Shown here: one piece after another, positions 7,701 to 60,868 of the stretch
Numbering within the stretch: the stretch's first letter is position 1
Layout: every line of letters starts with the position of its first letter
From: Octopus bimaculoides
Lineage: Eukaryota
DNA length: 64,000 nt
Assembly (NCBI RefSeq): GCF_001194135.2
Contig: NC_068988.1
Coordinates: forward strand, 91,580,943-91,644,942
Direction of reading: 5' to 3'
Made by a program: the position numbers and the translations under genes
Notes under the pieces: generated by a model
Databases searched by the model: none
What the model was told of the DNA's origin: nothing
The model's input: only the letters and a program-made list of their open reading frames with translations

Positions 7701-10425
7701 TATGTCCCTGTAACTTAGCAGTTTACTAAAAGAGACTGGTAGAATAAATGCCAAATTTTAAAAAAATAACTACTAGGGTCTCCTAATCTCAAACATCATG
7801 TGATGGTTGTCAGCATCATGCAATGTTTCCATCCAACCCATGTTAACATGGAAAAGTGGATGTGAAAACAATGGTGTGGTTTGTATGAATACATTTTAGT
7901 CGGTTCATTTTGTTGTTTCTATTCTTTTATATAAAGGATTAAACTCAGAAGGTTTACTTCTTTTAACATCATTGCTACACCCTCAATCCCCAAGTCTGAC
8001 GGGTATTTAATATAGGGACAGAGCTGTTTAGGAGAGCAGTTTTCACATCAGTGATGTTTTTTCACTGCAATACTGTACAAGTCTTATGTTAACACAATAA
8101 AATTATGTTATCCCACTGCATTATGGATTAAGATACAGGTCATCTATTCAGCTACACGGGTCATTGTTTCCTATTTTACAAACCTAAATAACTAACATAC
8201 TGTGTTCACCTGATCAGTATAAAATACTGCCTAAATAAGTATGTACCTATGTTGGCAAAGTTACTTATGCAGCTAGTATTTTTACGGTCAAAATCTCTCT
8301 CCTATTTTACAGGTAACAGAGTTTTTTTTTTTAAACTTCACTACTTTTAGAGTGCAAAGTGACAGAACAAAATGTTCAACAAGAATGACAACTTTTACAC
8401 GTGCATATATACACACACACACACACATACACATAAGATAGCCTTCCTTGCAGTTTCCATCTGCAAATTTTATTCATAACGCATGGTCAGCTTGAGGGCA
8501 ACAATAGAAAATATCTGCTCAGGTACTGTGCAGTGTGGTTGCACCTAAGGTCACAGTTGCACGCTAAACATTTTAACTATCCAGCCATCCTGCACCTAAA
8601 TTCATATACACCTATAGGAAAGTGGGTTATTGTAGCTCAGCGGGCTGCGTGTTCGAATCACGTCGGGGTCACCACTTTATAGGAAAGTGGGTTATTGTAG
8701 CTCAGCGGGCTGCGTGTTTGAATCACGTCGGGGTCACCACTTTATAGGAAAGTGGGTTATACATCATTAGATGTATACCTGACTTTCCTATATAAAATTA
8801 AGAATTAACGGAACGCTGAACTCCAAACTATCAACTTAAACAACATTTATTAAGGTGGTTAATATATACATCTTTAGCTCTTGTTTGTTGTTACAGCTTC
8901 TGTGGGTGTGAGCATGATTGTTGGGACGTTGGTATGTAGATGTGAGTGAGCTGTCTAGCGTAAGTTCGAAAGGTGGAGAGAGACAGCTAAACACGTCCTT
9001 GCTCAATCGCTGGCCAGCAAGAAAGAGACAGAATGAAGCGGGAAAGCTTGGTTGTTGAATTCCATGCATGCGTGAGACTACGCATGCGCACGGCGTTACT
9101 ACACACCTATGTATATATGTGCACAGGCATGGCTGTGTGGGTAAGAAGCTTACTGCCTGTGTTGTCTCAGGTTCCGTCCACTACATAGCATCTTGGGGAA
9201 GTGTCTTCCACTATAACCTTGAGCTGACTAAAGCTTGTGAGTAGATCTGGTAGATAAAAACTGAAAGAAGCCCATTGTGTATATGTGTGTGTTAACTTGC
9301 TTTGATCTGTGACGATTGTAAAGAAACATCACTATCAGACAAGCAACATTGTCTCCAGTCCTCCATGGAAGACATGTCTGGCCAGGAGAAATATTACCTT
9401 GCTTGGAAACAGGCGAGTGTTGGTGACAGATGGGGCATCTGGCTGTAGAAAAGTCTGCTTCAACGAAATTCCACCCAACCCATGCACACACACACACACA
9501 CACAGAGTTTGTGGGGAGTCTTCTTCCTTGGTTGTCACCTGCAGATCACTGATTTGATCATCATTACTCCCTCTTATATTGCCAATAAACATTGATGCTT
9601 TCTGAGAATGTCTGGATTCTTTCATTCCACCCCTTAGTATACCCACAACTCTTTCCTCTGCTTAACAACCAACAGCAGGTGTGACCCTCCTCACCATGCA
9701 GTGACTATTTTATGTCACTAGACGTTTTCTTTCTTTTTGTTTTCCTTGACATACCTTTGCCATATCCATGTGACACCCCCTCTGCTTCCCTCTACAATTT
9801 ACCAATCATTGTTCTGTTATCCTTCTCAAGAGCAATACTGGCCATGCAGGACATTGTGGATCTAACTACAACCCCACTAGCTTCCTCATGCCTCACACAT
9901 CTCCCTTCGTTTTACATATGCCCACTCCAATATACATGTCTCTCCATACAGAAATCATTGACTGAAGCATGATGATGACAATGATGATTTTGATGACATG
10001 ATAGTGAATAGTGTACTGAAAGCCTACATAGCTCTCTTCAAACAGCTGCAACGAAGCCATTTGACTGTACCAGAAAGCTCTATCCTTGATTAGCTCTGGT
10101 AGGTCCTCAATTTCAGGTTCTGTGTGTTGCAAATAACATCAATGTGTTGAATAGTCTTTGTTCTCCTTTAGGCTGCAGAAGTAACATCTGATATGACCCA
10201 GTGTTCAGCATGATAGCAATGACTAGCAAAGCTTACCCTTCGTAAACAGCTGGCAGTTAAATAGTTGCAAGTTCACAATGCTCGCATTCTTCTCTATGGA
10301 GCTGAAACCTGGACTATAAGCATCATCTCTATGGTAGATACACATTCTTATCAGGACTCAAACATCTCATGATATGTGCACAAGACCAAAGAAGAGATTT
10401 ATGGACACATACCCATATCTATCTA

Positions 10426-22996: not shown

Positions 22997-25900
22997 CTCT
23001 CTCTCACACGCACACTTAGCTTACTGCCAGTATATTCCATTCTTTATACAAACTTTGGAGAAACTGACAATACACACACACATGTATTGGGATGGTTTCT
23101 TTGTTTCTATATTGAAATCTGTTGAAAATGTCTTCAATACAGAAGTTCTAAAGTAGGAGTGGAGCACAAATGACCACACTTGACCAAAAGCTGATCTCAC
23201 ACTAAATCATATACAATTTAATTTTGGTTAAAAATGTCATTTTAAGCAGATATGTATATTGTTTTCTTGAGTAAAGACCTTGAATCCCACATCCTCTGTA
23301 CTAACTTCCCTTTTTAACACCCTACACTCGTACTCCATCAATCCATTTTTTCCATCCATTATTCCTGGGAGGGTCATGGGGGTGGTGTTCATGGGTATCT
23401 CCCCCATAGGATCCTATCAGGAGCAATTGTCATTACATTTTCCAGCTGGATTCCCAAACAACTGAGACAATGGATATTATCCAACCATCTCATTGCTGAT
23501 CAATCCCTAGATCTGCCAGTTGGCTTAGCTTCAAGAAACCAATTTGGGATTCATTCATAGTAACAGAGCTGTGACCTCACAATGCAGAGAAGCAGTGGCT
23601 TGACCTGGAGAGACTCCCTGATCTCCGAGTCCTATCAAATAACAATACTCCAGAGATCCTTTTGAGGAACCCCATTTTGGCTGCTTGTATTCACGATCAT
23701 ACTTTGTCGGTTACTGCCCAATTCATGACCATAGGTAAGGACAGGTATGAAAACAGAATTGAAGATACCATGTTTGAGCTTTTTACCAACCTCTCCACTT
23801 CCAAGGATCACATGCTGGAGCTGGTGCATTACTGTGCCAGCACCTGCAATTCTCACATCAAATTCAGCCCCTTGTTTCCTATTACTCATGAACATAGTTC
23901 CAAGATACTTAAATGTCTCAACTTGTCTCAGTGATGTTCCACTAACATGCAGAGTACACTGGGGAAACTTTCTTGACAGAACCAATGTCTCAACCTTCGC
24001 AACACTAATTCTCAACCATGCCCTGCCGCACTTGGCAGTGAGCCCGTTTAGTGCATGCTGGAGAGTACCTTTCAACAAGCCAAGCAGCACCATGTCATCT
24101 GCAAATATCAACTAACCAATCTACACCCACCAATCATGAGACAATTTCCACAATGGTAATCCACATGACAGTCCAGTTCATAAAATTTATGCTGTGTATA
24201 AACCAATAAGAATTCTCAGTTATTCATATCAATTTCTTTTCTCCCTCTCAGCAACGCACTCTACACTCCTGGGTAACCACAAACATTACCACATGACTAC
24301 ATCTATTAACTAATGTTATGATCTTACCTCCTGGTCACACACGACCAGCCTCATACTTCAGCTCAACAGTCTATTTTGAGTGAGGAGTCAGGCAATTGTA
24401 TTGTTGAATCACTCATTAATTGCAGTTATTAACAAAACATGAAATAAACATCTCCAAAGTTATCATCTGAGTAACTGAATATGGAGTTAGAATCCTGCAG
24501 GGAAACATTAATTCCATCTGTATTCAGTATTATATTTGACTGATTTCTCCACAAAAGGATTGTAAGTTTTTGAAAAGGGAAGTGCAACCTGTTTAGCTGC
24601 ACCCAGATTCACATTGGCAGTGTATATCTGCATTTATATAAAGTCTCTACACAGCAACACTCAAACAATTCAGCTCCTAACACACATATACATACCTATT
24701 ACACACAGACGCGTGCACACATGCACACACCCACATACCACTTCACCTTCCAACAGATTTTAAACCCTAATTTTCTCTTTTTATTCTGAAAATATTAATC
24801 CTTTAATTTTGAGAGAGTTAAGATCCCTAGCTAACAGCTCCATTGACAGTTAACTTTTGGATGCTGGCTGTAAGGATGAGCTACTTAAAACAGATAATCA
24901 CTAGTGAAGGGCTCATTTATGACAGATTCTGTTTTTATTCCTTAGGTAAGTTATTTTTCTCCCTTCCATAAGATAGCAGTAGAAACATTACATACTGTAA
25001 CAGTAGAGGGAGAGCAGAGTCAACAGTCTTCCTAAGCTAAACTCAATTGAAGGTCACAGGGCACCATCTGAGGTTTGGTCTTACTAATGGGGCTAAGCAT
25101 GCATGCATGATTCAGAGATGTAGAATCAAAATGAAACTTCAAGATCACCCAAACTCATTTTTTGATTCAGTAAATCAATGAAGTAGCACCATTGGTGATT
25201 TAAGGGACAAATTTTGCGATTCACTAGATATTAAAACATAGCACAATTCATCACATAAAGGGGATGCCAAGCAAGACTGAACCATCAACTGATGTTTTTT
25301 TTTTACAATAATACAGCAAAGGTAATTGATGGTTGGAGGGATGTCTTCCAGAGAGAAAGTCTGTTTCATAAACATCATCTGAAGCCCATAGACTTGTATA
25401 CAATATTTCTATATTATACAAATATGTTAAAGTTCTTAAATAGGAGAGTTTAACGGAGAAGAGAGAAACTTTCAGAAAATTCTTAGAACAGTTTCGTTGA
25501 TGAAATGTTGTTCAAGACTAGTGCAGGACCACCTTAGCAGCATTTATAGGCCTCCAGGCAAATCAGTGCACTTGACTCTTTAGTATTTATTTATCGACAG
25601 CATGCCATAACATACACAGATCAGAATTGGGCCTCAGGGCAACTGCCCAATGTGTCCATACCTTAAGAAAGCACTGCATGAATAAGCTTCAACTTCCAGG
25701 TTAAGGGTTCAAATAAAAGGTCCAACCTTGAATTGGAGTCTGACTCTAGATAAGACCTGACTCAGTAGATCTCTAATCAAAGAATATTTTAACCATGACA
25801 AGCATGTCTTGATTGCATTCCATATTAAATGTCTAATGGGTCTTTCCTTATTTAAGATCTGTACAACCACAAAGCTCCCACATTGACTTGACAGATCCAG

Positions 25901-29100: not shown

Positions 29101-31410
29101 ACGGGTAGTCATGATGGGTATATTGAGCTTCCTATATCTGTACCCCGGTGTCACTTTGATGGTATACGCTGCTCTCTCACTCAATTATAATAATTGATGA
29201 TGATGATAACAATCCTTTCTATATTAGGTGCAAGGCCTGAAATTTTGGGGGATAGGACTAGTTGATTACATCAACCCTAGCGTTTCGTTGCAACTTACTT
29301 CATCAACCCCCATAATAATTCTTCTTACTATAGGTACAGTGCCTGAGATTTTGGTGGCAGTGGGGGTAGCTGCTTATATTGATCCCAGAGTTCAGCTGGT
29401 ATTTATTTTATCAACCCCATGATGAAAGTCAAAATCAACCTCAGTTGAATTTGAACTCAGAATGTAAAACCTGAAGAAATACCGTTAAGCGTTCTGTCCA
29501 ACATGCTAATGAGTCTCCTAGCTTGCTGCCTTTGTGGGAGAGGAGTCAAATCAATTCCAGTACTTAACTGGTACTTTATTTTATTGACCCTCGAAGGATG
29601 AATAGACAAGCTGGCCTCAGTAGAATTTGGACTCAAAGCAATAAAGACAACAAGGCATTTTGTCCAATGGTCTAACAATTCTGCCAAACAGTCAATTAAA
29701 TTGGTTTCAAATTTCGACACAAGGCCAATAATTTCGGGGGAAGGGGTAAGTCAATTACATCGACCCAAGTGCTCAACTGGTACTTTATTTTATTGACCTT
29801 GAAAGGATGAAAGGCAAAATTGACCTTGGTGGAATTTGAACTCAGAACATAAAATTACAGATGAAATGCTGCTGCTGCTAAGCATTTTGCCTTACATGCT
29901 AACGATTCTGCCAGCAACTGCCTTAAACAGTCAATTAAATTGATATCAGTATATAACCATCAGAAGGATGTAAAGTATTCTCTAGCAGAATTTGACCTGA
30001 AACAACAAGATGTAACTAAATGCAAGGACACTGTTATTCCAGTGCTTAATAATTTTGGCAATACACCAATAATGATTTCCAACAGAAGCACAATGGTTCA
30101 AACTTAAGAGGGGTAGTGAATAGTGGATTATTATTAAGGAACTCCAGCACTTAGTGCTGTCTCAAAAATATTTTATTTTCTATTGATCAAACTACTAAGT
30201 TATAGTTTTGTCTTTTTTATATGAAGGGGACTCAGCACCCATAAATACACACACACCTATTTATATATATATGTATATATGTGTGTATGTATGTATGTGT
30301 GAAAGAGTTAAGACTGAGAAAAGAACCTTGTTAGAAAGTCAAAAGACACTAACCTTTGGCAAGAGATTTCACAAAACGTGTGTGGGCTTTGCTTCTATAG
30401 ATGTGCAAGCGCTTTCAGTTCTTAACATTTTGAAGCACGTGTTACTATATATAGGGGAATTTGTTTTCAGTAAAATTGTTGTTGACTATTTCCAGTCTTG
30501 TTTCGGACTCAGAAATCTTATGAAATATTCTTCTTTTGCCTTCCGGAGAAGGTCGTTCTCTTCATTTATTTTATGAAGAGGGAAAATTGTAAATTTTCCT
30601 TGTGCACAAGTGTCCAAATGATCGCTACATGGCATACATCTAAGAGCAGATGTTTTATTTGATGTCTATGCACATTTTCACGGTTGGTTAGTTTCATTTT
30701 TCTTCCCCCAATATAATGTTCGTTGCATTGTGGGCATGTGATACAATATATCAGGTTTTTGCTTTTGCAGTTCATATTTGCATTCACCTTTAATTCTTTT
30801 CCATTCTTGGATTTTTTTACTAGTCTCTGTTCTATTAAATAATATGTCCCATATCGGGGGTCTCCACATTTAGTAACTTGCATCATTTCTTCCTCTGATG
30901 CAAATCTTGCTTTGGTTAGAAGTTTTTTAAGATTTGGTGGTAGCCTTCGGCTGTTGATTATTTGTTGTTCCTTAATTATTTGTCGGAGACATGGGGACTG
31001 GTGTAGAATTGGTAGATGGTGTTTGGCTATTTGTAGAATATTGTGGTTCTTAAGATTGTTTGTAGAATCCCACCCATGCATAAGGAAAATTTACAATTTT
31101 CCCTCTTCATAAAACAAATGAAGAGAACGACCTTCTCTGGAAGGCAAAAGAAGAATATTTCATAAGATTTCTGAGTCCAAAACTAAACTGGAAATAGTCA
31201 ACAACAATTTTACTGAAAACAAGTTCCACTATATATAATAACATGTGCTTAAAAATGTTAAGAACTGAAAGCGCTTGCACATCTATAAAAGCAAAGCCCA
31301 CACACATTTTGTGAAATCTCTTGCCAAAGGTTAGTGTATTTTGACTTTCTAAAAAGGGTCTTTTCTTAATCTTAACTCTTTGAGAAAAAAAATCTCTCCA
31401 AATATATATA

Positions 31411-31470
<60 letters not shown>

Positions 31471-34400
31471 TACAAAAATATACTTTTATAAAAATATACA
31501 CACATATACATACAGCTATACTTTAGAAGAATGAGTGCTCAACACTACATGGATGAATAAATAATTTCTTTTAATAGAATTCAGTAATCCCATACCAAAG
31601 GTTTCATGCAGTTTATTTGCAGTTATTCAATCAGAGTTTAAATAACAGCCGACAACTCTACCATTTAACTGATGACAGTATTGTGTGTGTGTGTGTGTGT
31701 GCTCTCTCATACATACACACAAATATACAAGGGGGTACTGAAATTTTTCTAGCTTTGGGTGAAAGAAAATACAGGGGGATTAGTTAATTATGATTTTATT
31801 CAACATATTCCCCTCTCAGATTCACACACTTATTGCAGCAGTCCTTCAGTTTTCGTAAGCCCTGTAAAAGAACTTGGAAGTTTGGGCCCCAACCAAGCCT
31901 TTCACAATACCCTTAAAGCTAGGAGCTTTTCAGCATCACCTATGTGTAAATATATATATATACACAGACACACACACACACAAACACTTGACTTGGCTAA
32001 TCTACAGGAATGCTTTGTTATGATAGGAAATTGTGTGACTTTTATGCCTTCTTCAAGAACAAGAACAACAAAAAATCAAGTGAGATGATTCCAAGAAGGA
32101 ATAGAAACTGGCCAAACAATGAGTAAGCGCACCAAGAACTCGGTGTGGGGTATCTAAATTATTAAAAAAAAAAATTCATTTACTTTTTAAGTTACCAAAG
32201 AAAAAAGGCATAAGGAGATTAAATCTCACTCAAATATATTACTGGTACTTTAATGATATTCTGAAGTGACGAAAGACAAAATCCTACCACAGCAGGTTTA
32301 GCTTACAACAGGAAGGCATCAAACTAGATACCAGAAAAATATCTGGCTCACTTCTGCATCCGTGCTATCACCACCACCAGCATCAATAACAATAAACAAA
32401 ACAGAGGGATATACTCTTGGATTAGCCACAGCCAAGTCAGGGGTCAGCTATAGCAGGAATGAGCAGCATTGGACAATAACAAAAACAACCACATAGTGGA
32501 ATGTGTAGGGTTTCAATGAAAAACCCTTGGTGTTACTCTATTGAAACACCAAGTAAAATAAAGTTAAACAATTTAAGAACAAATTACAAAAAATAGAAAT
32601 TGAACCTACATCTATTTTGACTGAATAGGGGAGGGGCAATGTGGATGGCAGTTTTGACATGAAACTTTTTGGAATCACAGACTTAGGATGGTTTTGGTAG
32701 TTTTAGATACTCACTGAATATTCTCAGTAAGCCAAGAGTAGATTTTACAGACTGAGTAAGGAGAAGGTATTCTGGTCTCATTTTATATGCTACAACAGTA
32801 TTTTCCCTGTTATAACATGGTTGGCTGGTTGTACACATTTCGATATAAGCATGTGAATTATTGAAGTGCAAACTACTTAACTGTAACATGTAGTATCTAT
32901 TATCAGCCAAGCAGACTGAGGCACAGTTATAGCAGCATGCTATGTGTCACAACATAACAGGGGATGCAATGTTCAAACTGAAGCTGTCTTTTCTACAGTT
33001 AACACCCAACCCCCTAGGTTAACAAGATGTTTCTACTGATGTGAAAACTAAATTATTGTAGCCAAAATATTATAGATATGAGGCTGAATCAAGTGTTAAG
33101 ACATGGGAACTAATATTTCACATCCCGCATTTAGTAGGTGTGAATATATAACTTGACTAGAAGCACAACACAGACTACTGCAGGGATAAAACCCTGATCT
33201 TTGGTTTACTCAGGCAAATACCTAAAATCCCTGCCATTATACAAAAATAAATATATACATTGAAAAAATATTTTCATCTACAATCTCAATTAAAAATGAG
33301 GAAGGTGTGGGAGATAAGACAGCTTTGCAGACAGAAGTGAGACATGACAGGGATAACACATCTTCACAGAATAATGAGACAGAGCCATAACGAGTATCAT
33401 AGTGTAATGAGATGTCATAGTGCAGTGAGTCATAACAGCATGGTGAGTCATAACAGCATGAGGAGTCATAACAGCATGAGGAGTCATAACAGCATGAGGA
33501 GTCATAACAGCATGAGGAGTCATTACAGCATGAGGAGTCATAACAGCATGAGGAGTCATAACAGCATGAGGAGTCATAACAGCATGAGGAGTCATAACAG
33601 CATGAGGAGTCATAACAGCATGAGGAGTCATAACAGCATGAGGAGTCATAGCAGCATGAGGAGTCATTACAGCATGATGAGTCATTACAGCATAGTGAGT
33701 TGGGACAGTGGGGTGAGTCATAGTGAAATGCTAAGTCATTACAGCATGATGAGTCATTACAGCATGATGAGTCGTTACAGCATGGTGAGTCATTACAGCA
33801 TGGTGAGTCGTTACAGCATGGTGAGTCGTTACAGCATGGTGAGTCGTTACAGTGTGGTGAGTTCTCACAGCATGGAGAGTCATCACAGCATAGTGAATCG
33901 GTGTCACAATGTGATAGACAATATCACGATGCAACAAGATAGTGTCACAATGTGGTGTAGCATCACAGTGAGGAGTGTCACTGTTACAGTGAAGTGAGAC
34001 ATTACACAGAGAAATGATAGTGTCACTGTGAGGTGAGGTATCATTTTTACATCTTCACATATAAAAATTAACAATCAAACAACTCCAGAATGAGTAAAAA
34101 ATAGATGAAAAGGCCAGTTAACAAAAAATACACATTGTGCTTCTGGGGTGGCTGAAATACAGAAATCAACAAATACTTCTGCATTAGACCTTTTGTCTTA
34201 ACACTAAACATATAACATGTTTAAATTATTTGCAGCACTGAAAATATTAGATAGATAGATAGATAGAGAGAGAGAAAAAGAGAGAGAGAGAGAGTGTGTG
34301 TGTGTGTGTGTGTGTGTGTGATCACAGGGAGAAAATATTAAAAAATAGATACACTTTAATAAACTGGAAGACACTGGTCAAGGAAGCAGCTGACTGAAAC

Positions 34401-37400
34401 TTTAAATACATTTCCAGAATCATCTCAAAATAACTTTTAATAAACAACCTAAAATTAAAATGTAATCTATTCTATTTACACTATTCCCAAACTCTTCACA
34501 TAAAAACAAATAAAATACATTGTCATTGAGACATGATGAAAACAAGGGGTTGCATAGCTTGTGGGGTTCATGTATATATACAACATATCTTTTATCCCAA
34601 GTGTAAGTCAAGGCTATGTTAATCTTCTGCTAAGTTGATAATGTATGTTAAGGTTACAATAACCTAAGTCCGAACAGACAGATCATCTTAGATGTTATTT
34701 GTACATATATGCTTGTAAATAATCTTGAATGTACATGTGTGTAATTGTGGTTTGTAAATGTGCACACGAGTGTGTAATAGTATGTATGTATGTAGGCACA
34801 AATGTGGGTAGGAAATTATTTACCATAAAACATGTAAGCAAAAGAAATTGGGACAAAAAGGAAAATGAAGGCAAGTAAACAGATTCTCACCGTTTTCTCA
34901 GCTTCAAGTTTGGTACCATAGTCACTAGTGGATTCCCTGAGTTTTTGCTCAAAATCAGCTACACTTATCACAGATTCGGAAGTCTGACACTGACCATCAC
35001 ACTGTTTTGGCCGAGCAGCAAGCTGCCTGTATTCTAGCAGCTCAGCTTGAGTCTGTTTTAAGTTGGCCTCACACTCAGTCAGTTTGGAAGTGAGATTTTG
35101 GTTCAGCTCAGACATGGCAGCATTAAGAGTGGTGGACAGTTCACAATGTAGTGAATGTAATGCCTGCTCTTTCTCCGCATTTAACTTGGATTGCATCGAC
35201 TTATATTCCTCATCTAAGTTTGCATAATCCAATTTCAGGGATTCTAAGGAAGCGGTATGTTCTTTAATCAGCAGCTGCTTTGCTTCCTCAACAGCTTGCA
35301 TTTTCTCAGACATGAAACTGCTTTCTAGTTTCTCAATCAGCTCAGCTTTCTCTTTCTTGTTTGTCTCAGAGAAAGTGTCAGACATGTTAGATATATCTTG
35401 CATTAACTGATCCACCCTGCACTGTGCACATTCCAGATTATTTGATACCTGCGACATTTCCTCATTTTTCTGTGCAAGGAGACCTTCATACTCACTGCGT
35501 TGCTTATCAAGCCCCACCTCCATCTCCTTCTGACATTTATCACTTAACTGCTTTAAACTTTTCTCTTTCTCATCTTCCAGGAAACTTATCTTTTGACTAA
35601 GCAACTCACACTGGTTTTTATTCTGCCTCAGCTCCTCTTCAAGAGCACTGTTTTCTTGTTCCATCTCCTTAATCTGTTCATTGGCCTTACCCAATTTTTC
35701 AGTCATCATCTGGAGTGCAATTTCGTGTTCTTTCTGGAAAGCCAAGAAATTATCAGCACGCTCTTTATCTTTATTTTCATTGAACATACGGATAGCGTCC
35801 ATGAGGTTTTCCTCGACATGACTTGCATTTCTTATAAAATCAATTTGATTTTGCCGCATCAGTTCATGTAGTTCACACAGTTGTTCGCGGAACTCTGGCA
35901 GGCTGCGTTCCGTGGTGTTTTTAAGAGCCTTCAGTTTGTCTAACGTGACACCAAAGCTGGCACGACAGGCTTGCAGTTCTCGAGAGAGTTTCTCCGACAG
36001 TTCACACTTCTCCTGCAGCATCTTCTGTAGGTCTTCCTTTGGTATTCCCTTATGTAACGGAGCTTCAATAGATGACGGCATAGATTCATCAAAGTAAAAA
36101 TCAGCTGTTGTGAATTCCTGTGAAGTTTCCACTTCAGGAGAGGTGTCTGATGCCAGATGACCTTTCCAGTGATGTCTTCGACTTGAAACACTCTCACTGC
36201 TCTGTTCAACGCTCTGATTGACTGCATCGGTGTCACAGGAGAGACGGTAGCTGTCACTGGTTCCCGCTTGTGCATCACCAACCTGTTTAGCAGGAGATCC
36301 AGATTTCATCATTAAATCCTCTTTATCTATGCAAAAATCTTCATCAATGGCAACAGCTGCTGCATCAGATGAATGCGTGCCAAAATCAACAGGGGGGGTT
36401 TGGCAATAACTGTCATTACTCTGAGTATGTGGTGAGTTGACAATAGTAAATGGACAGATGTTCTGAGATGTAGCAGTAGCAGCATCAATGGCAGATACTG
36501 ACTGGCTGGCTTCTTCCTTCTGCTCTTCTTTGTTGGTCAGCTTTAAGGATAACCTATCTTCAACCAACTCCGGAGAAATGTTACGAAGATCTTGAAACAC
36601 TTGCTTACTGACATTCACACAAAGTTGATTATAAAGATTTTTCTTTGGAGGCATTCTGGAAAACAGGATTAAAAAGAGGAAGAAAAAAAATTTAGACTTT
36701 CTCAGTGAATTAACAGTAGAAGATTAATTAACAATAAGTGGATTAATAAGTAACAGGAAATCTATAGGATGACTGAACTCTCAGGGACACAGTTTCAAGT
36801 ATTAATCTGGATCCACACAAACTTGGTTTTACTACTGCTCTAACCCTTTCTTCCTCTAACACTAACCTGAACATTGTAACAATCCTTCTACCCCTACATC
36901 ATCTTGTAACTGCTTCCTACCTCTGTATCTCTCCACTAACCACTCAACATTAAAAAATTTCCCTCAAGTGTCCATGACGGCCTGTATATAACACACTAAA
37001 CAGTTATGGATTCTGATACTGACCCTTCCCCGTAAAAGATGCTTCTGACCAACAGTAAACTATAAAAGCTAGGGGAGGAAAAAAAAAATGGGCTGTCAGA
37101 ACTCAAACAATTGACCCATATTACACCCTGGCATCAAACTGCCCAGCATCACCACCACGTTACCCACACAACTACGACAGCAAGAAGATGAAACCAAGGT
37201 AACTTACATGAGTGAACTAGCTAATTCTGGAACAGCTGTTTTCAGTTTTTCAATGTCATCACTTGTAATCTCTGGGATGTTGTGATCGAAAGTACGTGGA
37301 GGGGTTGTCTGTAGGGGGAAGAAGAAACATTGATATGGTTTTGTGAGTAGGGGTGAAGAAGAACATTGACATGGCTCAGTAAATAGGGTGAAGAACATTG

Positions 37401-46300: not shown

Positions 46301-49300
46301 GTTGTTAACTTGTTTACAAAATACTTTCTGCTAATGCAGACCACTACTAGTTTCCTCTGCGTGTGTGGGCATGTTGCAGCTCAAGATAGTTTATTTGGTG
46401 TCTGACCAAGTGATACTGTGATAACAATCTCTATGTTTGCTTCCACAGTCTTGTGTCCTTGTTTTGTTTAAGCAGGATATCCCTCAATGTCTCAAACTTT
46501 CACAGCAGTTGCTACTAAAGCTCTAAAGCCTACAAGAGAGACAAGAGAGTATCACTGATGGACTAAGCGCACAATGCAAAATAATTCTGAGATATGATAA
46601 TTTAGTCTGACCACTGAACATTGTAGGGGCCCAGCTGCTGAAAGTGAAACCAAAACTAGCCACTGAATAGACATGTCAAAGGCTTTAGCCCAGTTCTTAT
46701 CTGGTTAGGGCCATACCAAAGCCACATCTATTCACTACCCACTTTACAATACAGGCGGAGCTCGTTGTCATGAGAAGCCTGGTCAGAGATCCAATCTGCG
46801 ATTAGACTAACAACAACAAGCACCAAACTTTTAGCAAACTTCTTTAACTGTGTTCAGCAGAATTTTAGGTCAAATATTGCCACAGGTTCCAATATTTCCT
46901 TTCTAAGAATGTGTTGTGAATGTTAGTGTGTATATATCATAGGCAGTTTGTTCTGGGTGAGTATGTTACAGATTAAGACAAATGGTTACAGGTGTATCAC
47001 AGGTCAAGTCAGATGGCTTAAGTATATTACAGGTGTGGATATGTCCTCAGTGTGAGTAACATGAAATAAAAACAGTAAACTAGATGAAGTGAAGTGGATT
47101 TGAACACCTAATGTTACCATCATAACAGCCAGGTTACATAGACTTACCTGATAGAACTTGGTCTGTTTATCCATTATGGTACGAGTGTTGGTTATCAAGT
47201 GGTCCAACTGGTAGAGGCGATTCTCCAGACCTTTCACCTCCTTCATGTCAGGACGGTCAATAAATTTGAGCATATCATCAATCTCCTGCATTAACTTCTC
47301 CACATTCTTCTGACTTATCTGGAAAAGTGGAGTGAGAGTTGAGAGGTAACAGGGAGGAGTTGAGGTGGGAGGAAAGAGATAGAAAGGAACACAAAGGTAG
47401 AAGAATAGAGAAGTTAGTGGGGCAAAGTTAAGAAAAAGTGATAGTTGAAGTAGTTAGAGTGGAGGTATGTGGAGGGGGATAGATAGTAGATTGGGTGGCA
47501 GAGGAAGAACCACAAGTAAATTAATGGTTTAATTATTTGAAATAATGTCTTGTATATGTGTGTGTTTGTGAGAGAGAGAGAGAGAGAGAGAGAGAAAGTG
47601 TACACAACAAGAATAACATACCTGTTCAGAAATCACTCTACACTGCTCAACCATATCTTCTAAACTGCTGCGAGGGTCCTGGGGAGACAAACAGACACAA
47701 ACAATGAGTGGCTGAAGTTTCACTCATACTCTACACAACAGAGAGTGTGACATACGGAATGTAATAAGTACCACAAACAATTAGAGTGTAGTTTTATATC
47801 TTACAGTATCTTAGTTTCCATATCAATGCAAACCACACATTATCTTAATAATTTAACTTTACAGAAGCTGGTTTCTTAGTTTAATGTTCAGACAGGTTAC
47901 TTTATTACAAGTAATAATAATTTAAGGTGGAGTGAGAGAGGGAGGGAGACAGAGAGAGGGAGAGAGAGAGAGGGATGGAGACAGAGAGAGGGATGGAGAC
48001 AGAGAGAGGGAGGGAGACAGAGAGAGGGAGGGAGACAGAGAGAGGGAGGGAGACAGAGAGAGAGAGAGAGAGGGAGGGAGACAGAGAGAGAGAGTGGGGG
48101 AGACAGAGAGAGAGAGAGAGAGAGAGGGAGGGAGACAGNNNNNNNNNNNNNNNNNNNNNNNNNNNNNNNNNNNNNNNNNNNNNNNNNNNNNNNNNNNNNN
48201 NNNNNNNNNNNNNNNNNNNNNNNNNNNNNNNNNNNNNNNNNNNNNNNNNNNNNNNNNNNNNNNNNNNNGAGAGAGGGATGGAGACAGAGAGAGGGATGGA
48301 GATAAAGAGAGAGATGGAGACAGAGATAGGGAGGGAGACAGAGAAAGAGAGAGACAGAGAGAGAGAGAGAGACAGAGAGAGAGAGAGGGAGGGAGACAGA
48401 GACAGACAGACAGACAGACAGAGAGAGAGAGAGAGAGAGATGTGTATGTAGTAAATTACCTGTTGATATATCCAGTCTAGCAAGGAAGGTGAACGATGAC
48501 CACCACTATCACTAACATCTTCAAGCATAGCAGGTTCAACAGGATTAGTTTGTGAGAGAGGACTGGACACTAACGTCTGAAGACTGTTTAACAGTGGAAT
48601 ACGGCCAAGAAGTCTTAAAATCCCTGGAACACTGAGAGAACACATAGAACAATGGTGTATATTAATGGACTGAGGTAGTAGTAGGAGGAGAGTAGTGAGT
48701 GGGGGTGAAGTGGAGAGACAAAAGATATGTGAAAGTGAAAGTTATCTCATTAGCAATCATCATCATCGTTTAACGTCCGCTTTCCATGCTAGCATGGGTT
48801 GGACGATTTGACTGAGGACTGGTGAAACCGGATGGCAACACCAGGCTCCAATCTAAATTTGGCAGAGTTTCTACAGCTGGATGCCCTTCACGCCAATACA
48901 CATTGTAATTTATATAATAACATAATTAAGATACATAAGCTCATTGTGTGTGTGTGTGTGTGTATTATCTCTTACTTGTTTCAATCATTAGAGTGTGGCC
49001 ATGCTAGAGCACTGCCTTGAAGAATTTTAGCCAAATGAATTGACACTGGTGCTTTTATTTTTTAAGCCTGGAATTTATTCTGTCAGATTCTTCTGCTGAA
49101 CTGCTAAGTTATAAGAACTTAAACACATCAACACCAGCTGTCAAGTGGTAGGGGGGGGAACAGACACAAAGACATGCACACACACACACACAACAGGCTT
49201 CTTGGAACTTCTGCCTACCAAATCCACTCACAAGGCTTTGGTCAGCCCAAGGTTATAGTAGAAGACACTTGCCCTAGGTGAAATGTAGTAGGAACACAGA

Positions 49301-58610: not shown

Positions 58611-60868
58611 NNNNNNNNNNNNNNNNNNNNNNNNNNNNNNNNNNNNNNNNNNNNNNNNNNNNNNNNNNNNNNNNNNNNNNNNNNNNNNNNNNNNNNNNNN
58701 NNNNNNNNNNNNNNNNNNNNNNNNNNNNNNNNNNNNNNNNNNNNNNNNNNNNNNNNNNNNNNNNNATAAAATAAACAATGAAAAATGTCTTGGCATCATC
58801 TCTAAAAATAGCCAAACAGCTACAACTGCTGTCCACGAGAATGCACAGTGGAGGGAAATAAATATTCGTACATGTCAAAGTTCTTTATTTATGTAATTGC
58901 TAATGAACATAAATGGGAAATACCAATACTATATTTGCATACACCTGCATAAACTAAGAATATGCAAAAGAAACTAATAAATTATAGTAACTAAGGAATT
59001 TATATACAATTATAAATATTTAGGGGTGAAAAAAGTATTCGTACAGAATAAATTTATGAGTTTCCATGCCACAAAATACAATTAAAATAATTTTTTTTTA
59101 CTAGAACTTTCTCGTTTGCTCCAATAATCTTATCAGTAGTCATTTTTAAGTGTCAAAACGCAAGCTTCTTCATCCAGCACTGAGACAACATAAAGTAGTG
59201 TCGTAATAATGGCGAAAAGGAAAGAACTCACAAATTCAGTGAAAGACTTAATTATTGAACAGTGGAAAGCAGGTAAAAGTTACAGGAAAATATCAGAGAC
59301 CCTTTGTATTCCATTTTCTACCATATCTTCATTTATTCAAAGATATAAAAAATCGGGAACTGTTGAAAACAGAATAAGATCCGGTGCACCACGCAAGATT
59401 TCCCCTAGATCTTTAAGAAAAATGAAGCGAAGAATTGAAAAAAATGCAATGATTACCAAAAAGAAGTTGCAAGAAGATCTGTTAGCTTCAGGGACCAGTG
59501 TTACACTACGAACAATCAGCAATGAACTTCATAGGAATGAACTGAAGTCACGCTCTCCTAGAAAAACTCTGCTGTTGACTAAAAGGCATAGAGATGCCAG
59601 TTTAAAATTTGTTTATGAACATAAAGATAAATCTGATACATTCCGGGAAAATGTTCTATGGACAGACGAGTCGAAAATTGAATTGTTTGGATGAAATTCG
59701 CGTAGCCATGTTTGGAGGAAAGATGATACCGCCTATTCGCCGAAAAACAATTCCTACTGTAAAGTTTGGAGGTGGCAACATCATGGTGTGGGGGTGTTTC
59801 TCTGCAAATGGCACTGGCAATTTACATGTGATAGATGGTAGAATGAATGCATAGATGTACCAAAATATTTTGAACAATAATTTATGGGACTCTGTAGAAA
59901 AGCTCCAGCTTTGTGAAGGGTGGGTTTTACAACAGGATAACGACCCTAAGCACACAGCGAAGTTTACCAAAAAAATGGATTGCCAATCATAATATAAAAT
60001 TATTAGAATTGCCAAGCCAGTCATCTGACTTGAACCCCATTGAAAATTTGTGGTGTTATTTGAAAATTAAAATTCATTCAAGAGCCCCAACTTGCATTCC
60101 AGATTTGAAGAAAATTTGTCAAGAAGAATGGAAAAAAATTCCTAAAGAAACATGCAAGTCGTTGATTAAGAACTACAAGAAGAGATTGGTTGAAGTGAAA
60201 CTGAATAATGGTTATGCTATGAAGTATTAAATCAGAATTATCAGTTATTTATGTTCTGTACGAATACTTTTTTTCACTCCTAAACATTTATAATTGTATA
60301 TAAATTCATTGGTTACTATAATTTATTAGTTTCTTTTGCATATTCTTAGTTTATGTATGTTTATGCAAATATAGTTTTGGTATATCCCATTTATGTTCAT
60401 TAGAAATTAAATAAATAAAGAATTTTGACATGTATGAATATTTATCCCCCCCCCCCACTGTATATAAAGGACAAAAGACAGCCAGTCAACTACAGTTGAA
60501 ACATTCCTGTCACAACATGGGACCTTGAAGACTGCTTAAATGCAAGAAACTATATTAGTCCTTTAATATTTGATACTCAATATTTCATTTATTCAATAAG
60601 ACAACTAATACTTCATTTCATTTTACTATATATACTATATATTCTATATCTTACATTACTATTATAAGACTATAAATAAAACATAAAAAACAGACAGAGT
60701 TGGAATTACTTTGAGTAATATATTCTTCTATACACAATCATACAAACCCCTTTATATATCATCATCGTTTAACGTCCGCTTTCCATGCTAGCATGGGTTG
60801 GACGATTTGACTGAGGACTGGTGAAACCGGATGGCAACACCAGGCTCCAGTCTATATATATATATATA

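What the first reader, a model, noticed from the sequence alone, without database searches (positions are those of the whole stretch)
8613..9103. LTR element whose 3' end is a tandem array of tRNA-Trp copies plus re-created LTR termini
Seen, minus strand: a 361-bp LTR-like unit (TGTAG...AATAAA...CTATA), then twice [AAG + 32 nt complementary to mature tRNA-Trp including CCA + CGCTGAGCTACA + the last 18 nt of the LTR]. The whole is flanked by CACC direct repeats. Established: LTR elements normally copy only 18 nt of the primer tRNA, because plus-strand synthesis stops at m1A58, and an integrated copy ends in a full second LTR. Here 32 nt are copied (to about position 45, past A58), and the integrated end is only an 18-bp att-like terminus. 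Inference: either a plus-strand strong-stop DNA that read through the tRNA and was circularised or re-primed twice before integration, or a minimal one-LTR TRIM-like family that iteratively adds tRNA-derived units at its end. The 12-nt linker reads TGTAGCTCAGCG on plus, resembling both an inverted LTR start and a tRNA A-box.
Basis: partly seen in the sequence, partly recalled or inferred. Interest (0 to 1): 0.8.

Follow-up and report, generated by a model that had tools for sequence, protein, structure and literature searches.

The report
Retrotransposon LTR with duplicated tRNA-Trp primer modules
This is a lone long terminal repeat of a gypsy-type retrotransposon in an animal genome, whose end carries two tandem copies of a module partly copied from tryptophan tRNA; the same oddities occur in complete elements elsewhere, so it is most likely a relic of such a family rather than a new kind of mobile element.

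Summary
On the minus strand, 9103 to 8613, there is a 361-nt LTR-like unit with a TATA box, an AATAAA signal and a U5 hairpin. It is followed by two 65-nt units, each made of AAG, 32 nt complementary to the tRNA-Trp 3' end including CCA, a 12-nt linker, and the last 18 nt of the LTR. GGTG flanks the whole.

A copy of tRNA longer than 18 nt is real and must come from read-through into the primer tRNA. It is not special to this copy. A metagenome scan found gypsy-like elements, several carrying gag, protease, RT or integrase, with 28-50 nt of tRNA-Trp complement directly after the 5' LTR. Some also carry tandem tRNA-derived repeats, and one carries an array of U5-end plus primer-site units. Avian-retrovirus-like contigs with the same primer site stop at exactly 18 nt.

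Best reading (confidence 0.45): a solo LTR or deletion relic of a tRNA-Trp-primed Ty3/gypsy family whose U5-end/primer-site module is tandemly duplicated. Priming from a downstream copy would place the modules inside the LTR.

A self-propagating one-LTR family is mechanistically unlikely. Direct integration of an aberrant cDNA remains possible. No second copy of this LTR could be retrieved, so the choice stays open. Interest is moderate.

The parts
8743..9103 (-). 361-nt LTR-like unit (TGTAGTAACG...ACTTTCCTATA), a putative U3-R-U5
   Evidence: Sequence read. It is followed immediately by AAG plus a perfect tRNA-Trp primer-binding site. It is CpG-rich, unlike its TA/TG-rich flanks. No second copy exists in the window.
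8861..8868 (-). TATA-like box TATATATT, at LTR positions 236-243
   Evidence: Motif positions. The function is inferred.
8846..8851 (-). AATAAA polyadenylation signal, at LTR positions 253-258
   Evidence: Motif positions. The function is inferred.
8743..8792 (-). U5-end hairpin with 23-nt arms, 87% complementary, and a 4-nt loop. Its 3' arm contains the 18-nt terminus that is repeated in the units.
   Evidence: the repeat finder I1. RNA fold of 8613-8800 gives -51.9 kcal/mol, z-score -5.9.
8678..8742 (-). Unit 1, next to the LTR: AAG (8740-8742), 32-nt tRNA-Trp complement (8708-8739), 12-nt linker (8696-8707), 18-nt copy of the LTR end (8678-8695)
   Evidence: It carries the T-loop variant TTCAAAC, a CpG decay relative to unit 2.
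8613..8677 (-). Unit 2, distal: AAG (8675-8677), 32-nt tRNA-Trp complement (8643-8674), 12-nt linker (8631-8642), 18-nt copy of the LTR end (8613-8630). This is the end of the element.
9104..9107 (-). Upstream copy of the putative 4-bp target-site duplication GGTG (CACC on the plus strand)
   Evidence: Significance is moderate only, because the left boundary is not independently defined.
8609..8612 (-). Downstream copy of the putative 4-bp target-site duplication GGTG
   Evidence: The right boundary is defined independently: homology to the LTR/AAG junction ends exactly after CCTATA.

Best explanation
The 491 bp are a dead relic of a tRNA-Trp-primed Ty3/gypsy-type LTR retrotransposon. In that family, the module 'last 18 nt of U5 + AAG + tRNA-Trp copy' has become tandemly repeated at the U5/leader boundary. 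The relic is most likely a solo LTR.

Proposed steps:
1. Inferred from the sequence and from established reverse-transcription rules: plus-strand strong-stop synthesis read past position 58 of the primer tRNA. This fixed a tRNA copy of at least 32 nt, possibly about 44 nt, in the leader.
2. Inferred: the nascent strand then continued on a template end that still carried about 18 nt of U5. This duplicated the U5-end/primer-site module. Later slippage, or a repeat of the same event, gave more copies.
3. Follows from the rules of LTR reverse transcription: when tRNA primes from a downstream primer-site copy, everything upstream of it becomes part of U5 and so part of both LTRs. That gives 361 + 2 x 65 = 491-bp LTRs ending in the normal U5 terminus.
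4. A common, established process: recombination between the two LTRs removes the interior and leaves one LTR between the 4-bp target-site duplication.

A close variant is recombination between an 18-nt copy in the leader array and the identical end of the 3' LTR.

The locus has no coding capacity and cannot move by itself.
For: 1. It is an LTR/primer-site junction. A perfect 18-nt tRNA-Trp site occurs twice, against 0.02 expected. It sits 3 nt after a unit that has a TATA box, an AATAAA signal and a U5 hairpin.
2. A tRNA-Trp primer site together with a 4-bp target duplication are stated hallmarks of the CsRn1/Boudicca clade of gypsy elements (PMC2582038). A shrimp element, GyRex2, uses the same primer (PMC3587641).
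3. Extended tRNA copies are a lineage trait. Among the 20 metagenome loci holding the 28-mer, 17 place it in non-tRNA sequence, mostly just after an LTR-like end; L011 is a tRNA-Trp gene and L009/L014 a tRNA-Glu. The complement runs 28-50 nt there. L006/L019 carry RT, RNase H, integrase and a DUF7041 gag, L013 and L010 carry a DUF7041 gag, and L004 carries gag and protease. L017 runs into a gag-like reading frame, seen by eye and not scanned.
4. Three independent families stop at the same 32 nt: the window, L003/L015 and L006/L019.
5. The tRNA part is re-copied at each event. L007 and L017 share an LTR (88% identity) but carry 37 nt and 29 nt of tRNA copy, and their homology ends there.
6. Tandem tRNA-derived repeats occur in leaders ahead of gag. 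They vary in copy number within a family: 2.4 units in L013 and L016, 1.4 in L008.
7. L018 has at least 7 units of about 113 nt. Each holds the LTR 3' end, a 2-nt spacer, a 15-nt primer site and a piece of leader. This is the closest analogue of the window array.
8. No gag or pol reading frame, second LTR or polypurine tract lies near the locus. That fits a solo or relic copy.
9. As a control, nine IMG/VR contigs with the same primer site stop at exactly 18 nt.
Against: - No other copy of this LTR could be retrieved. Searches with the LTR reading frame and the unit reading frame found nothing. A full-length relative with the array, or paired 491-bp LTRs, is therefore predicted but not seen.
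- The analogues come from other families, probably from other phyla.
- L018 is not shown to be part of a full-length element.
- The resemblance of an L003 spacer to its own U5 end is weak (p about 0.04).
- The linker is only 7 of 12 like tRNA-Trp, and its CTACA end mirrors the LTR start. The model does not explain this.
- The left boundary and the target duplication are only moderately supported.
Confidence: 0.45

Rival explanations
1. An aberrant reverse-transcription product was integrated directly. A plus-strand strong-stop DNA (U3-R-U5) read through the tRNA primer. It switched template twice back to the last 18 nt of U5 and ran off at the tRNA/DNA junction. Integrase then inserted this one-LTR molecule, making a 4-bp duplication. 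The insertion was dead on arrival.
For: - The left end coincides with a possible U3 start (TG), and the right end is exactly the U5 terminus. These are the two ends integrase needs.
- Both unit junctions are identical, as expected from repeated switches at the same sites.
- Read-through of the primer tRNA is real in these lineages, and it varies between copies of one family.
- Read-through past position 58 when m1A58 is missing is documented for HIV-1 (PMC8599865).
Against: - It needs several rare steps in a single particle, and it needs the single-stranded product to be converted into an integration-competent duplex.
- There is no microhomology at the linker/U5 junction.
- The same architecture follows from ordinary solo-LTR formation if the family carries the array, and arrays of this type exist elsewhere.
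- One unit has a CpG decay, but the three 18-nt copies are identical. This does not separate the two models.
Confidence: 0.2
2. An ordinary truncated element plus later local duplication. A 5' LTR with its leader suffered an internal deletion. The breakpoints happened to lie after the tRNA-derived segment and 18 nt before the end of the 3' LTR. The resulting 18-47-18 arrangement then expanded by replication slippage. No special reverse-transcription event is needed beyond the inherited long primer site.
For: - Direct repeats of 18 nt spaced 65 nt apart are a good substrate for slippage.
- The units are 98% identical.
- Copy number of short tRNA-derived repeats varies within a family elsewhere (L008 against L013 and L016).
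Against: - It requires a deletion that preserves the exact U5 terminus and the target duplication.
- It does not explain why similar U5-end plus primer-site modules recur in an unrelated element (L018).
Confidence: 0.12
3. A minimal non-autonomous 'one-LTR' family that propagates as such and adds tRNA-derived units at its end.
For: Only the integrase-compatible ends and the putative 4-bp duplication.
Against: - A transcript starting in R would have no 3' copy of R for the first strand transfer.
- There is no polypurine tract next to any LTR start.
- There is no second copy in 64 kb.
- No related reading frames were found in the protein collection.
Confidence: 0.05
4. A tRNA-derived SINE, or a tandem pair of tRNA pseudogenes, on the plus strand and transcribed by RNA polymerase III.
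For: On the plus strand, TGTAGCTCAGCGG resembles an A box and GTTCGAATC resembles a B box. The segment carries CCA, like a retro-copied tRNA.
Against: - ARAGORN finds no tRNA and Rfam finds no family match.
- Only the 3' 32 nt are tRNA-Trp-like.
- The boxes are about 8 nt apart, where roughly 30-60 nt is usual.
- CCA is followed by the complement of the spacer and U5, which is the signature of a primer-site junction.
- There is no A-rich or LINE-like tail.
Confidence: 0.03
5. An assembly artefact: the second 65-bp unit does not exist in the organism.
For: The window contains N gaps, so it is a draft assembly. Short tandem duplications can be mis-assembled.
Against: The two units differ by one base, which an artificial duplication would not produce. 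Even with a single unit, the LTR + tRNA copy + U5-end structure would remain.
Confidence: 0.05

Closest known systems
Solo LTRs of Ty3/gypsy retrotransposons
   Same: A single LTR-like unit with a promoter, a polyadenylation signal and a U5 hairpin. It has no internal region or partner LTR and is flanked by a short direct repeat.
   Different: A normal solo LTR contains no primer-binding site. This one carries two primer-site modules. That is compatible with a solo LTR only if the modules belong to the LTR of the parent element, which is predicted but not shown.
CsRn1 / Boudicca / Kabuki / PwRn1 clade of Ty3/gypsy elements; GyRex2 of a shrimp
   Same: A tRNA-Trp primer-binding site and a 4-bp target-site duplication are named as shared properties of the clade (PMC2582038; PMC3587641).
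   Different: The clade is defined by its Gag (CHCC motif) and by pol phylogeny, and nothing here is coding. The papers read here do not report long tRNA copies or repeated modules. The coding relatives found here have a DUF7041-type gag (L006/L019, L013, L010) or a zinc-knuckle gag (L004), and I did not place them in that clade.
Retroviral plus-strand strong-stop read-through of the primer tRNA
   Same: The primer tRNA is copied beyond the 18 nt that m1A58 normally allows. Loss of m1A58 lets HIV-1 RT continue, with U54 acting as a second stop (PMC8599865). From memory, tRNA sequence has also been found between LTRs in circle junctions of avian and murine retroviruses, and in Ty1.
   Different: In retroviruses these are dead-end by-products. 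Here, and in the metagenome elements, the long copy is inherited by elements with gag and pol. Retrovirus-like contigs with the same tRNA-Trp site stop at 18 nt.
TRIM / SMART / LARD non-autonomous LTR elements
   Same: Small, non-coding, and with a primer site next to a terminal repeat.
   Different: Those elements have two terminal direct repeats flanking a primer site and a polypurine tract. This locus has one LTR plus an 18-nt terminus and no polypurine tract.
The 'strong-stop DNA' origin proposed for tRNA-derived SINEs (Ohshima and Okada, 1993; cited from memory)
   Same: A tRNA segment with CCA joined to the complement of U5, when read on the plus strand.
   Different: That hypothesis concerns minus-strand strong-stop DNA that became a polymerase III retroposon. 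Here the complete U3-R-U5 is present, and there is no polymerase III-type tRNA head and no LINE-type tail.

Membership tests
LTR retrotransposon LTR (Ty3/gypsy type) | Primer-binding site complementary to the 3' end of a tRNA, including CCA, within a few nt of the LTR end | tested here: met
   An 18/18 match to the tRNA-Trp site lies 3 nt after the unit. It occurs twice; 0 of 100 shuffles reach two matches. Complementarity continues to 32 nt.
LTR retrotransposon LTR (Ty3/gypsy type) | TG...CA termini forming short inverted repeats | tested here: inconclusive
   The unit starts TGTAG and ends CTATA, so the termini are TG...TA and the inverted match is 4 of 5. One metagenome relative also ends in TA before its site (L001).
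LTR retrotransposon LTR (Ty3/gypsy type) | Target-site duplication of 4-6 bp | tested here: inconclusive
   GGTG lies on both sides. However, the left boundary has no independent support, and the extended 8-mer is over-represented in the window (6 occurrences).
Full-length LTR retrotransposon | Second LTR, polypurine tract, gag/pol reading frames | tested here: not met
   No second LTR in 64 kb. No purine tract before TGTAG. No reading frame of 70 aa or more that looks like gag or pol within 8 kb either side, judged by eye and not scanned against Pfam.
Solo LTR | One complete LTR and nothing else between the target-site duplications | not testable with these tools
   This holds only if the two 65-nt modules are part of the family's LTR. 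Testing it needs paired LTRs from the host genome, which none of the collections on hand holds.
CsRn1-like clade of gypsy elements | tRNA-Trp primer site and 4-bp target-site duplication | tested here: met
   The criteria come from PMC2582038.
CsRn1-like clade of gypsy elements | CHCC Gag motif and pol phylogeny | not testable with these tools
   The locus has no coding sequence.
TRIM / SMART | Two terminal direct repeats enclosing a primer site and a polypurine tract | tested here: not met
   The only repeats are the 18-nt termini and the 65-nt units. There is no polypurine tract.
tRNA-derived SINE / tRNA pseudogene | tRNA-like cloverleaf head with correctly spaced A and B boxes, and a 3' tail | tested here: not met
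   ARAGORN finds 0 genes. Rfam finds 0 matches. Only tRNA positions 45-76 are recognisable.
Retrozyme | Hammerhead ribozyme inside the repeats | tested here: not met
   No Rfam family reaches its gathering score in the window.

The most novel reading that the evidence does not exclude
The tandem modules are written by reverse transcriptase itself and are heritable. The proposed sequence is as follows:
1. Plus-strand synthesis runs through an under-modified or cleaved tRNA-Trp primer.
2. It jumps end-to-end onto the 3' end of minus-strand DNA that still carries an RNase H-limited stub of about 18 nt of U5.
3. This adds one 'tRNA copy + U5 terminus + primer site' module per event.

Arrays of primer sites would then grow over replication cycles. 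They would shift between leader and LTR depending on which copy primes. They would also record the modification state of tRNA-Trp in the host germ line. This would be a so far undescribed, systematic by-product of LTR replication in invertebrates.
Probability: 0.2. Interest if true: 0.7.

Novelty: new variant of a known kind. Interest (0 to 1): 0.4.

Why it matters
- If the long tRNA copies and the repeated U5-end/primer-site modules are products of reverse transcription, they are natural fossils of steps otherwise seen only in retroviral test systems. Those steps are the stop at m1A58, the second strand transfer and template jumping.
- The contrast found here is 18 nt in avian-retrovirus-like contigs against 28-50 nt in invertebrate gypsy-like elements using the same tRNA. 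It suggests a difference in tRNA-Trp modification, or in the reverse transcriptase, that could be tested directly.
- There is also a practical consequence. LTR annotation tools that assume an 18-nt primer site directly after the LTR will misplace LTR ends in such families.
- For this locus alone the consequence is small, because it is a dead, non-coding relic.

Tried and rejected
1. Other copies of the LTR inside the window: none (blastn).
2. Other copies through predicted proteins. The 77-aa LTR reading frame, tried by exact look-up and homology search, and the 41-aa reading frame spanning two units, found nothing.
3. Viral contigs with the 28-mer: none. With the 18-mer: only retrovirus-like contigs that stop at 18 nt. 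I used these as a control. Only 36 nt at each primer site, plus 12 nt upstream of it, were read.
4. Host identification. The 612-aa reading frame is 94% identical to a Logan contig of run SRR11869394 and 48% identical to an ENA contig. Tc1/mariner domains and simple-sequence richness point to an animal.
5. Literature searches for long or duplicated primer sites gave background only. I found no description of such arrays.
6. The SINE or polymerase III reading was rejected.
7. The claim that an L003 spacer is a copy of its own U5 end is only weakly supported (p about 0.04), and I do not rely on it.
8. Two readings of the linker are both post hoc and remain unresolved: a copy of the tRNA-Trp anticodon arm (7 of 12 matches, p about 0.014) or an inverted LTR start (CTACA).
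Full report
**1. The observation**

- A 361-nt unit (9103-8743) starts TGTAGTAACG and ends ACTTTCCTATA.
- It carries a TATA-like box at LTR positions 236-243 and AATAAA at 253-258.
- Its last 50 nt form a hairpin with 23-nt arms. The fold of 8613-8800 has a z-score of -5.9.
- Two 65-nt units follow, at 8742-8678 and 8677-8613. Each consists of AAG, then 32 nt beginning with the exact 18-nt tRNA-Trp primer-binding sequence TGGTGACCCCGACGTGAT, then the 12-nt linker CGCTGAGCTACA, then ATAACCCACTTTCCTATA. That last stretch is identical to the last 18 nt of the 361-nt unit.
- Tandem Repeats Finder gives period 65, 2.3 copies, 98% matches.
- The 18-mer occurs twice against 0.02 expected.
- The only difference between the units is a CpG-to-TpG change in the part corresponding to the tRNA T-loop.
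- GGTG abuts both ends.

**2. Caveats on the observation**

- The right end is defined independently, because homology with the LTR/AAG junction stops exactly after CCTATA.
- The left end is not defined independently. The longer shared 8-mer ATAGGTGT occurs six times on this strand of the window. The target-site duplication is plausible but not strong evidence.
- A sharp change supports a boundary near 9103. The sequence switches there from TA/TG-rich simple sequence to CpG-rich sequence.
- The termini are TG...TA.
- The window has no second copy of the LTR, no tRNA gene and no Rfam match. No reading frame of 70 aa or more that looks like gag or pol lies within 8 kb on either side.
- The window is from an animal genome draft. 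It has N gaps, abundant simple repeats, a Tc1/mariner transposase fragment and a weak RT fragment.
- I could not name the host. A 612-aa reading frame at 34816-36654 is 94% identical to a contig of sequencing run SRR11869394. That accession is not in the paper library.

**3. What the tRNA-like part is**

The segment includes CCA. It lies in the orientation and position of a primer-binding site, 3 nt after a U5 end. Complementarity past 18 nt cannot be inherited from a normal primer site. By the established mechanism, the plus strand copies the primer tRNA only up to m1A58. The long segment therefore implies read-through into the mature tRNA at some time in the history of the family.

Against an insect tRNA-Trp gene recovered here (L011), the 32 nt differ at two positions. 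From memory, a tRNA-Trp isodecoder with exactly these two bases exists in vertebrates, but I could not check the host. The 12-nt linker matches positions 33-44 at 7 of 12 (binomial p about 0.014). Its last five bases, CTACA, are also the reverse complement of the LTR start. I leave its origin open.

**4. Related sequences**

One scan of the metagenome collection for TGGTGACCCCGACGTGATTYRAACACGC returned 20 loci.
- Two (L009, L014) are an unrelated tRNA-Glu in a tRNA cluster. One (L011) is a tRNA-Trp gene.
- In the other 17 the 28-mer lies in non-tRNA sequence, in most of them directly after an LTR-like end, usually ...CA plus 0-2 nt.
- The complement to tRNA-Trp runs as follows: 28-31 nt in L017, L018 and L001; about 29 nt in L008, L013 and L016; 32 nt in L003/L015 and L006/L019; 36-39 nt in L010, L012, L007 and L005; 45 nt in L020; about 50 nt in L002 and L004. 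The 50-nt copies end just before position 26.
- Several are real elements. L003, L006 and L019 have LTR pairs about 4.9 kb apart. L003 and L019 also show purine tracts before TGTG... LTR starts.
- Pfam finds RVT_1, RT_RNaseH_2, rve and a DUF7041 gag in L006/L019, a DUF7041 gag in L013 and L010, and an aspartic protease in L004, whose reading frame also shows a zinc-knuckle gag.
- L017 runs from the site into a gag-like reading frame.
- Nine IMG/VR contigs with the same 18-mer stop at exactly 18 nt. From memory, I recognise their U5 end...GGCTTCATT, as avian leukosis/sarcoma type.

The scan required 28 nt, so it says nothing about how common long copies are. It does show that they are inherited by gypsy-like elements with gag and pol in several families. 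They are not confined to aberrant molecules.

**5. Repeats of the tRNA-derived part elsewhere**

- L013 and L016 have 2.4 copies, and L008 has 1.4 copies, of a 28-nt tRNA-derived unit between the primer site and gag. This is copy-number variation within one family.
- L003/L015 carry four partial tRNA-Trp copies in the leader of an element with both LTRs.
- L018 has at least seven units of about 113 nt. Each unit holds about 58 nt of the LTR 3' end, a TT spacer, a 15-nt primer site and 40 nt of leader. This is the same kind of module as in the window.
- L007 and L017 share an LTR (88% identity) but carry 37 nt and 29 nt of tRNA copy, and their homology ends there. This fits re-copying of the tRNA at each transposition.
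- The U5 end of L007/L017 (...ATTACCCAGTTCACTAAAG|TGG) resembles that of the window (...ATAACCCACTTTCCTATAAAG|TGG), at 81% over 68 nt.

**6. Most likely explanation**

A transcript from one LTR plus an 18-nt terminus has no 3' copy of R and no polypurine tract. A self-propagating one-LTR family is therefore mechanistically unlikely. Two routes remain.

Route (a): the parent family carries the module array, and tRNA primed at a downstream primer-site copy.
1. Under the rules of LTR reverse transcription, everything between R and the primer site in use becomes U5.
2. Both LTRs of the progeny would then be 361 + 2 x 65 = 491 bp and would end in the normal U5 terminus.
3. Ordinary LTR-LTR recombination then leaves exactly what is seen, between the original target-site duplication.
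4. A variant is recombination between an 18-nt copy in the leader and the identical end of the 3' LTR.

Route (b): an aberrant plus-strand strong-stop product, made by read-through and two template switches, became double-stranded and was integrated directly.

Route (a) uses only common processes once the array exists, and arrays of this kind exist in other elements. I therefore rank (a) at 0.45 and (b) at 0.2.

For the origin of the first module I propose the following as inference only. The plus strand reads through the tRNA. It then continues on the 3' end of minus-strand DNA that still carries a short U5 stub left by RNase H. This would produce 'tRNA copy | about 18 nt of U5 | spacer | primer site' without needing homology at the junction. 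None is present: the LTR has GATGT, and the units have CTACA, before ATAACCC.

**7. Comparison with what is known**

- The tRNA-Trp primer site and the 4-bp duplication match the hallmarks given for the CsRn1/Boudicca clade of gypsy elements (PMC2582038). A crustacean element, GyRex2, uses the same primer (PMC3587641). Clade membership rests on Gag and pol, which are absent here.
- Read-through of the primer tRNA when m1A58 is missing is documented for HIV-1, with U54 as a second stop (PMC8599865).
- My literature searches found no description of inherited 28-50-nt tRNA-Trp copies, or of tandem U5-end/primer-site modules. The library is incomplete, so this is absence of evidence only.
- The SINE and retrozyme readings fail their defining tests.

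**8. Verdict**

The tRNA read-through inference is sound. The special mechanisms proposed for this copy are neither needed nor demonstrated. I file it as a new variant of a known kind, a solo LTR or relic with duplicated primer modules, of moderate interest (0.4). The more interesting reading is that reverse transcriptase iteratively writes such modules. I give it about 0.2. It could be tested at once with the host genome.

Noticed in passing
L001-L020 (metagenome contigs): Gypsy-like LTR elements, apparently from arthropod DNA in gut and other metagenomes, carry 28-50 nt of tRNA-Trp complement after the 5' LTR. End points cluster at about 28-32, 36-39, 45 and 50 nt. The 50-nt copies stop just before tRNA position 26. 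Retrovirus-like contigs with the same primer site stop at 18 nt.
   Followed up: partly
L018:393-1271 (oriented so that the primer site is on the plus strand): A tandem array of at least 7 units of about 113 nt. Each unit holds an LTR 3' end (...TGTACA), TT, a 15-nt tRNA-Trp primer site and about 40 nt of leader. The last unit has a 28-nt tRNA copy plus about 46 nt that the other units lack.
   Followed up: partly
L007:1-258 versus L017:170-453: The same LTR family (88% identity) carries different lengths of tRNA-Trp copy, 37 nt and 29 nt. Homology stops there. L017 continues into gag, while L007 continues into a SINE-like sequence.
   Followed up: partly
L009:192-269 and L014:7229-7306: A tRNA-Glu (UUC) inside a dense tRNA cluster of phage or bacterial type has a 3' 28 nt, including encoded CCA, identical to that of eukaryotic tRNA-Trp.
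   Followed up: no
L011:6116-6190: A complete tRNA-Trp(CCA) gene is followed directly by CCA in the DNA. This could be chance or a retro-copied mature tRNA.
   Followed up: no
window 34816-36654 (-): A 612-aa uninterrupted reading frame with no Pfam domain. It is 94% identical to a Logan contig (L021; DNA 92% identical over 2.2 kb) and 48% identical to a protein on a 70-kb ENA contig. It is probably a real single-exon gene of unknown function.
   Followed up: partly
window 59209-59694 (+): The N-terminal part of a Tc1/mariner transposase (Pfam HTH_SB and HTH_Tnp_Tc3_2).
   Followed up: partly
window 23635-24111 (-) and 30566-31081 (-): The first is a weak reverse-transcriptase fragment with a FADD motif (RVT_1, E = 0.0055). 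The second is a cysteine-rich reading frame (…[14 protein letters not shown]…) with no Pfam hit, which by eye resembles the GIY-YIG region of Penelope-like elements.
   Followed up: partly
window 33344-33997 (+): A reading frame made of a tandem SHNSMR-type repeat. This is a coding-looking minisatellite.
   Followed up: no
window about 48050-48300 and about 58650-58800: Runs of N (assembly gaps) inside CT/GA and TA simple-sequence tracts. The window comes from a draft assembly.
   Followed up: no
window 8737-8755, 8672-8690: A 7-bp inverted repeat, CCACTTT / AAAGTGG, straddles each U5-end/primer-site junction. The U5 terminus can therefore pair with the spacer and the first bases of the primer site.
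   Followed up: no
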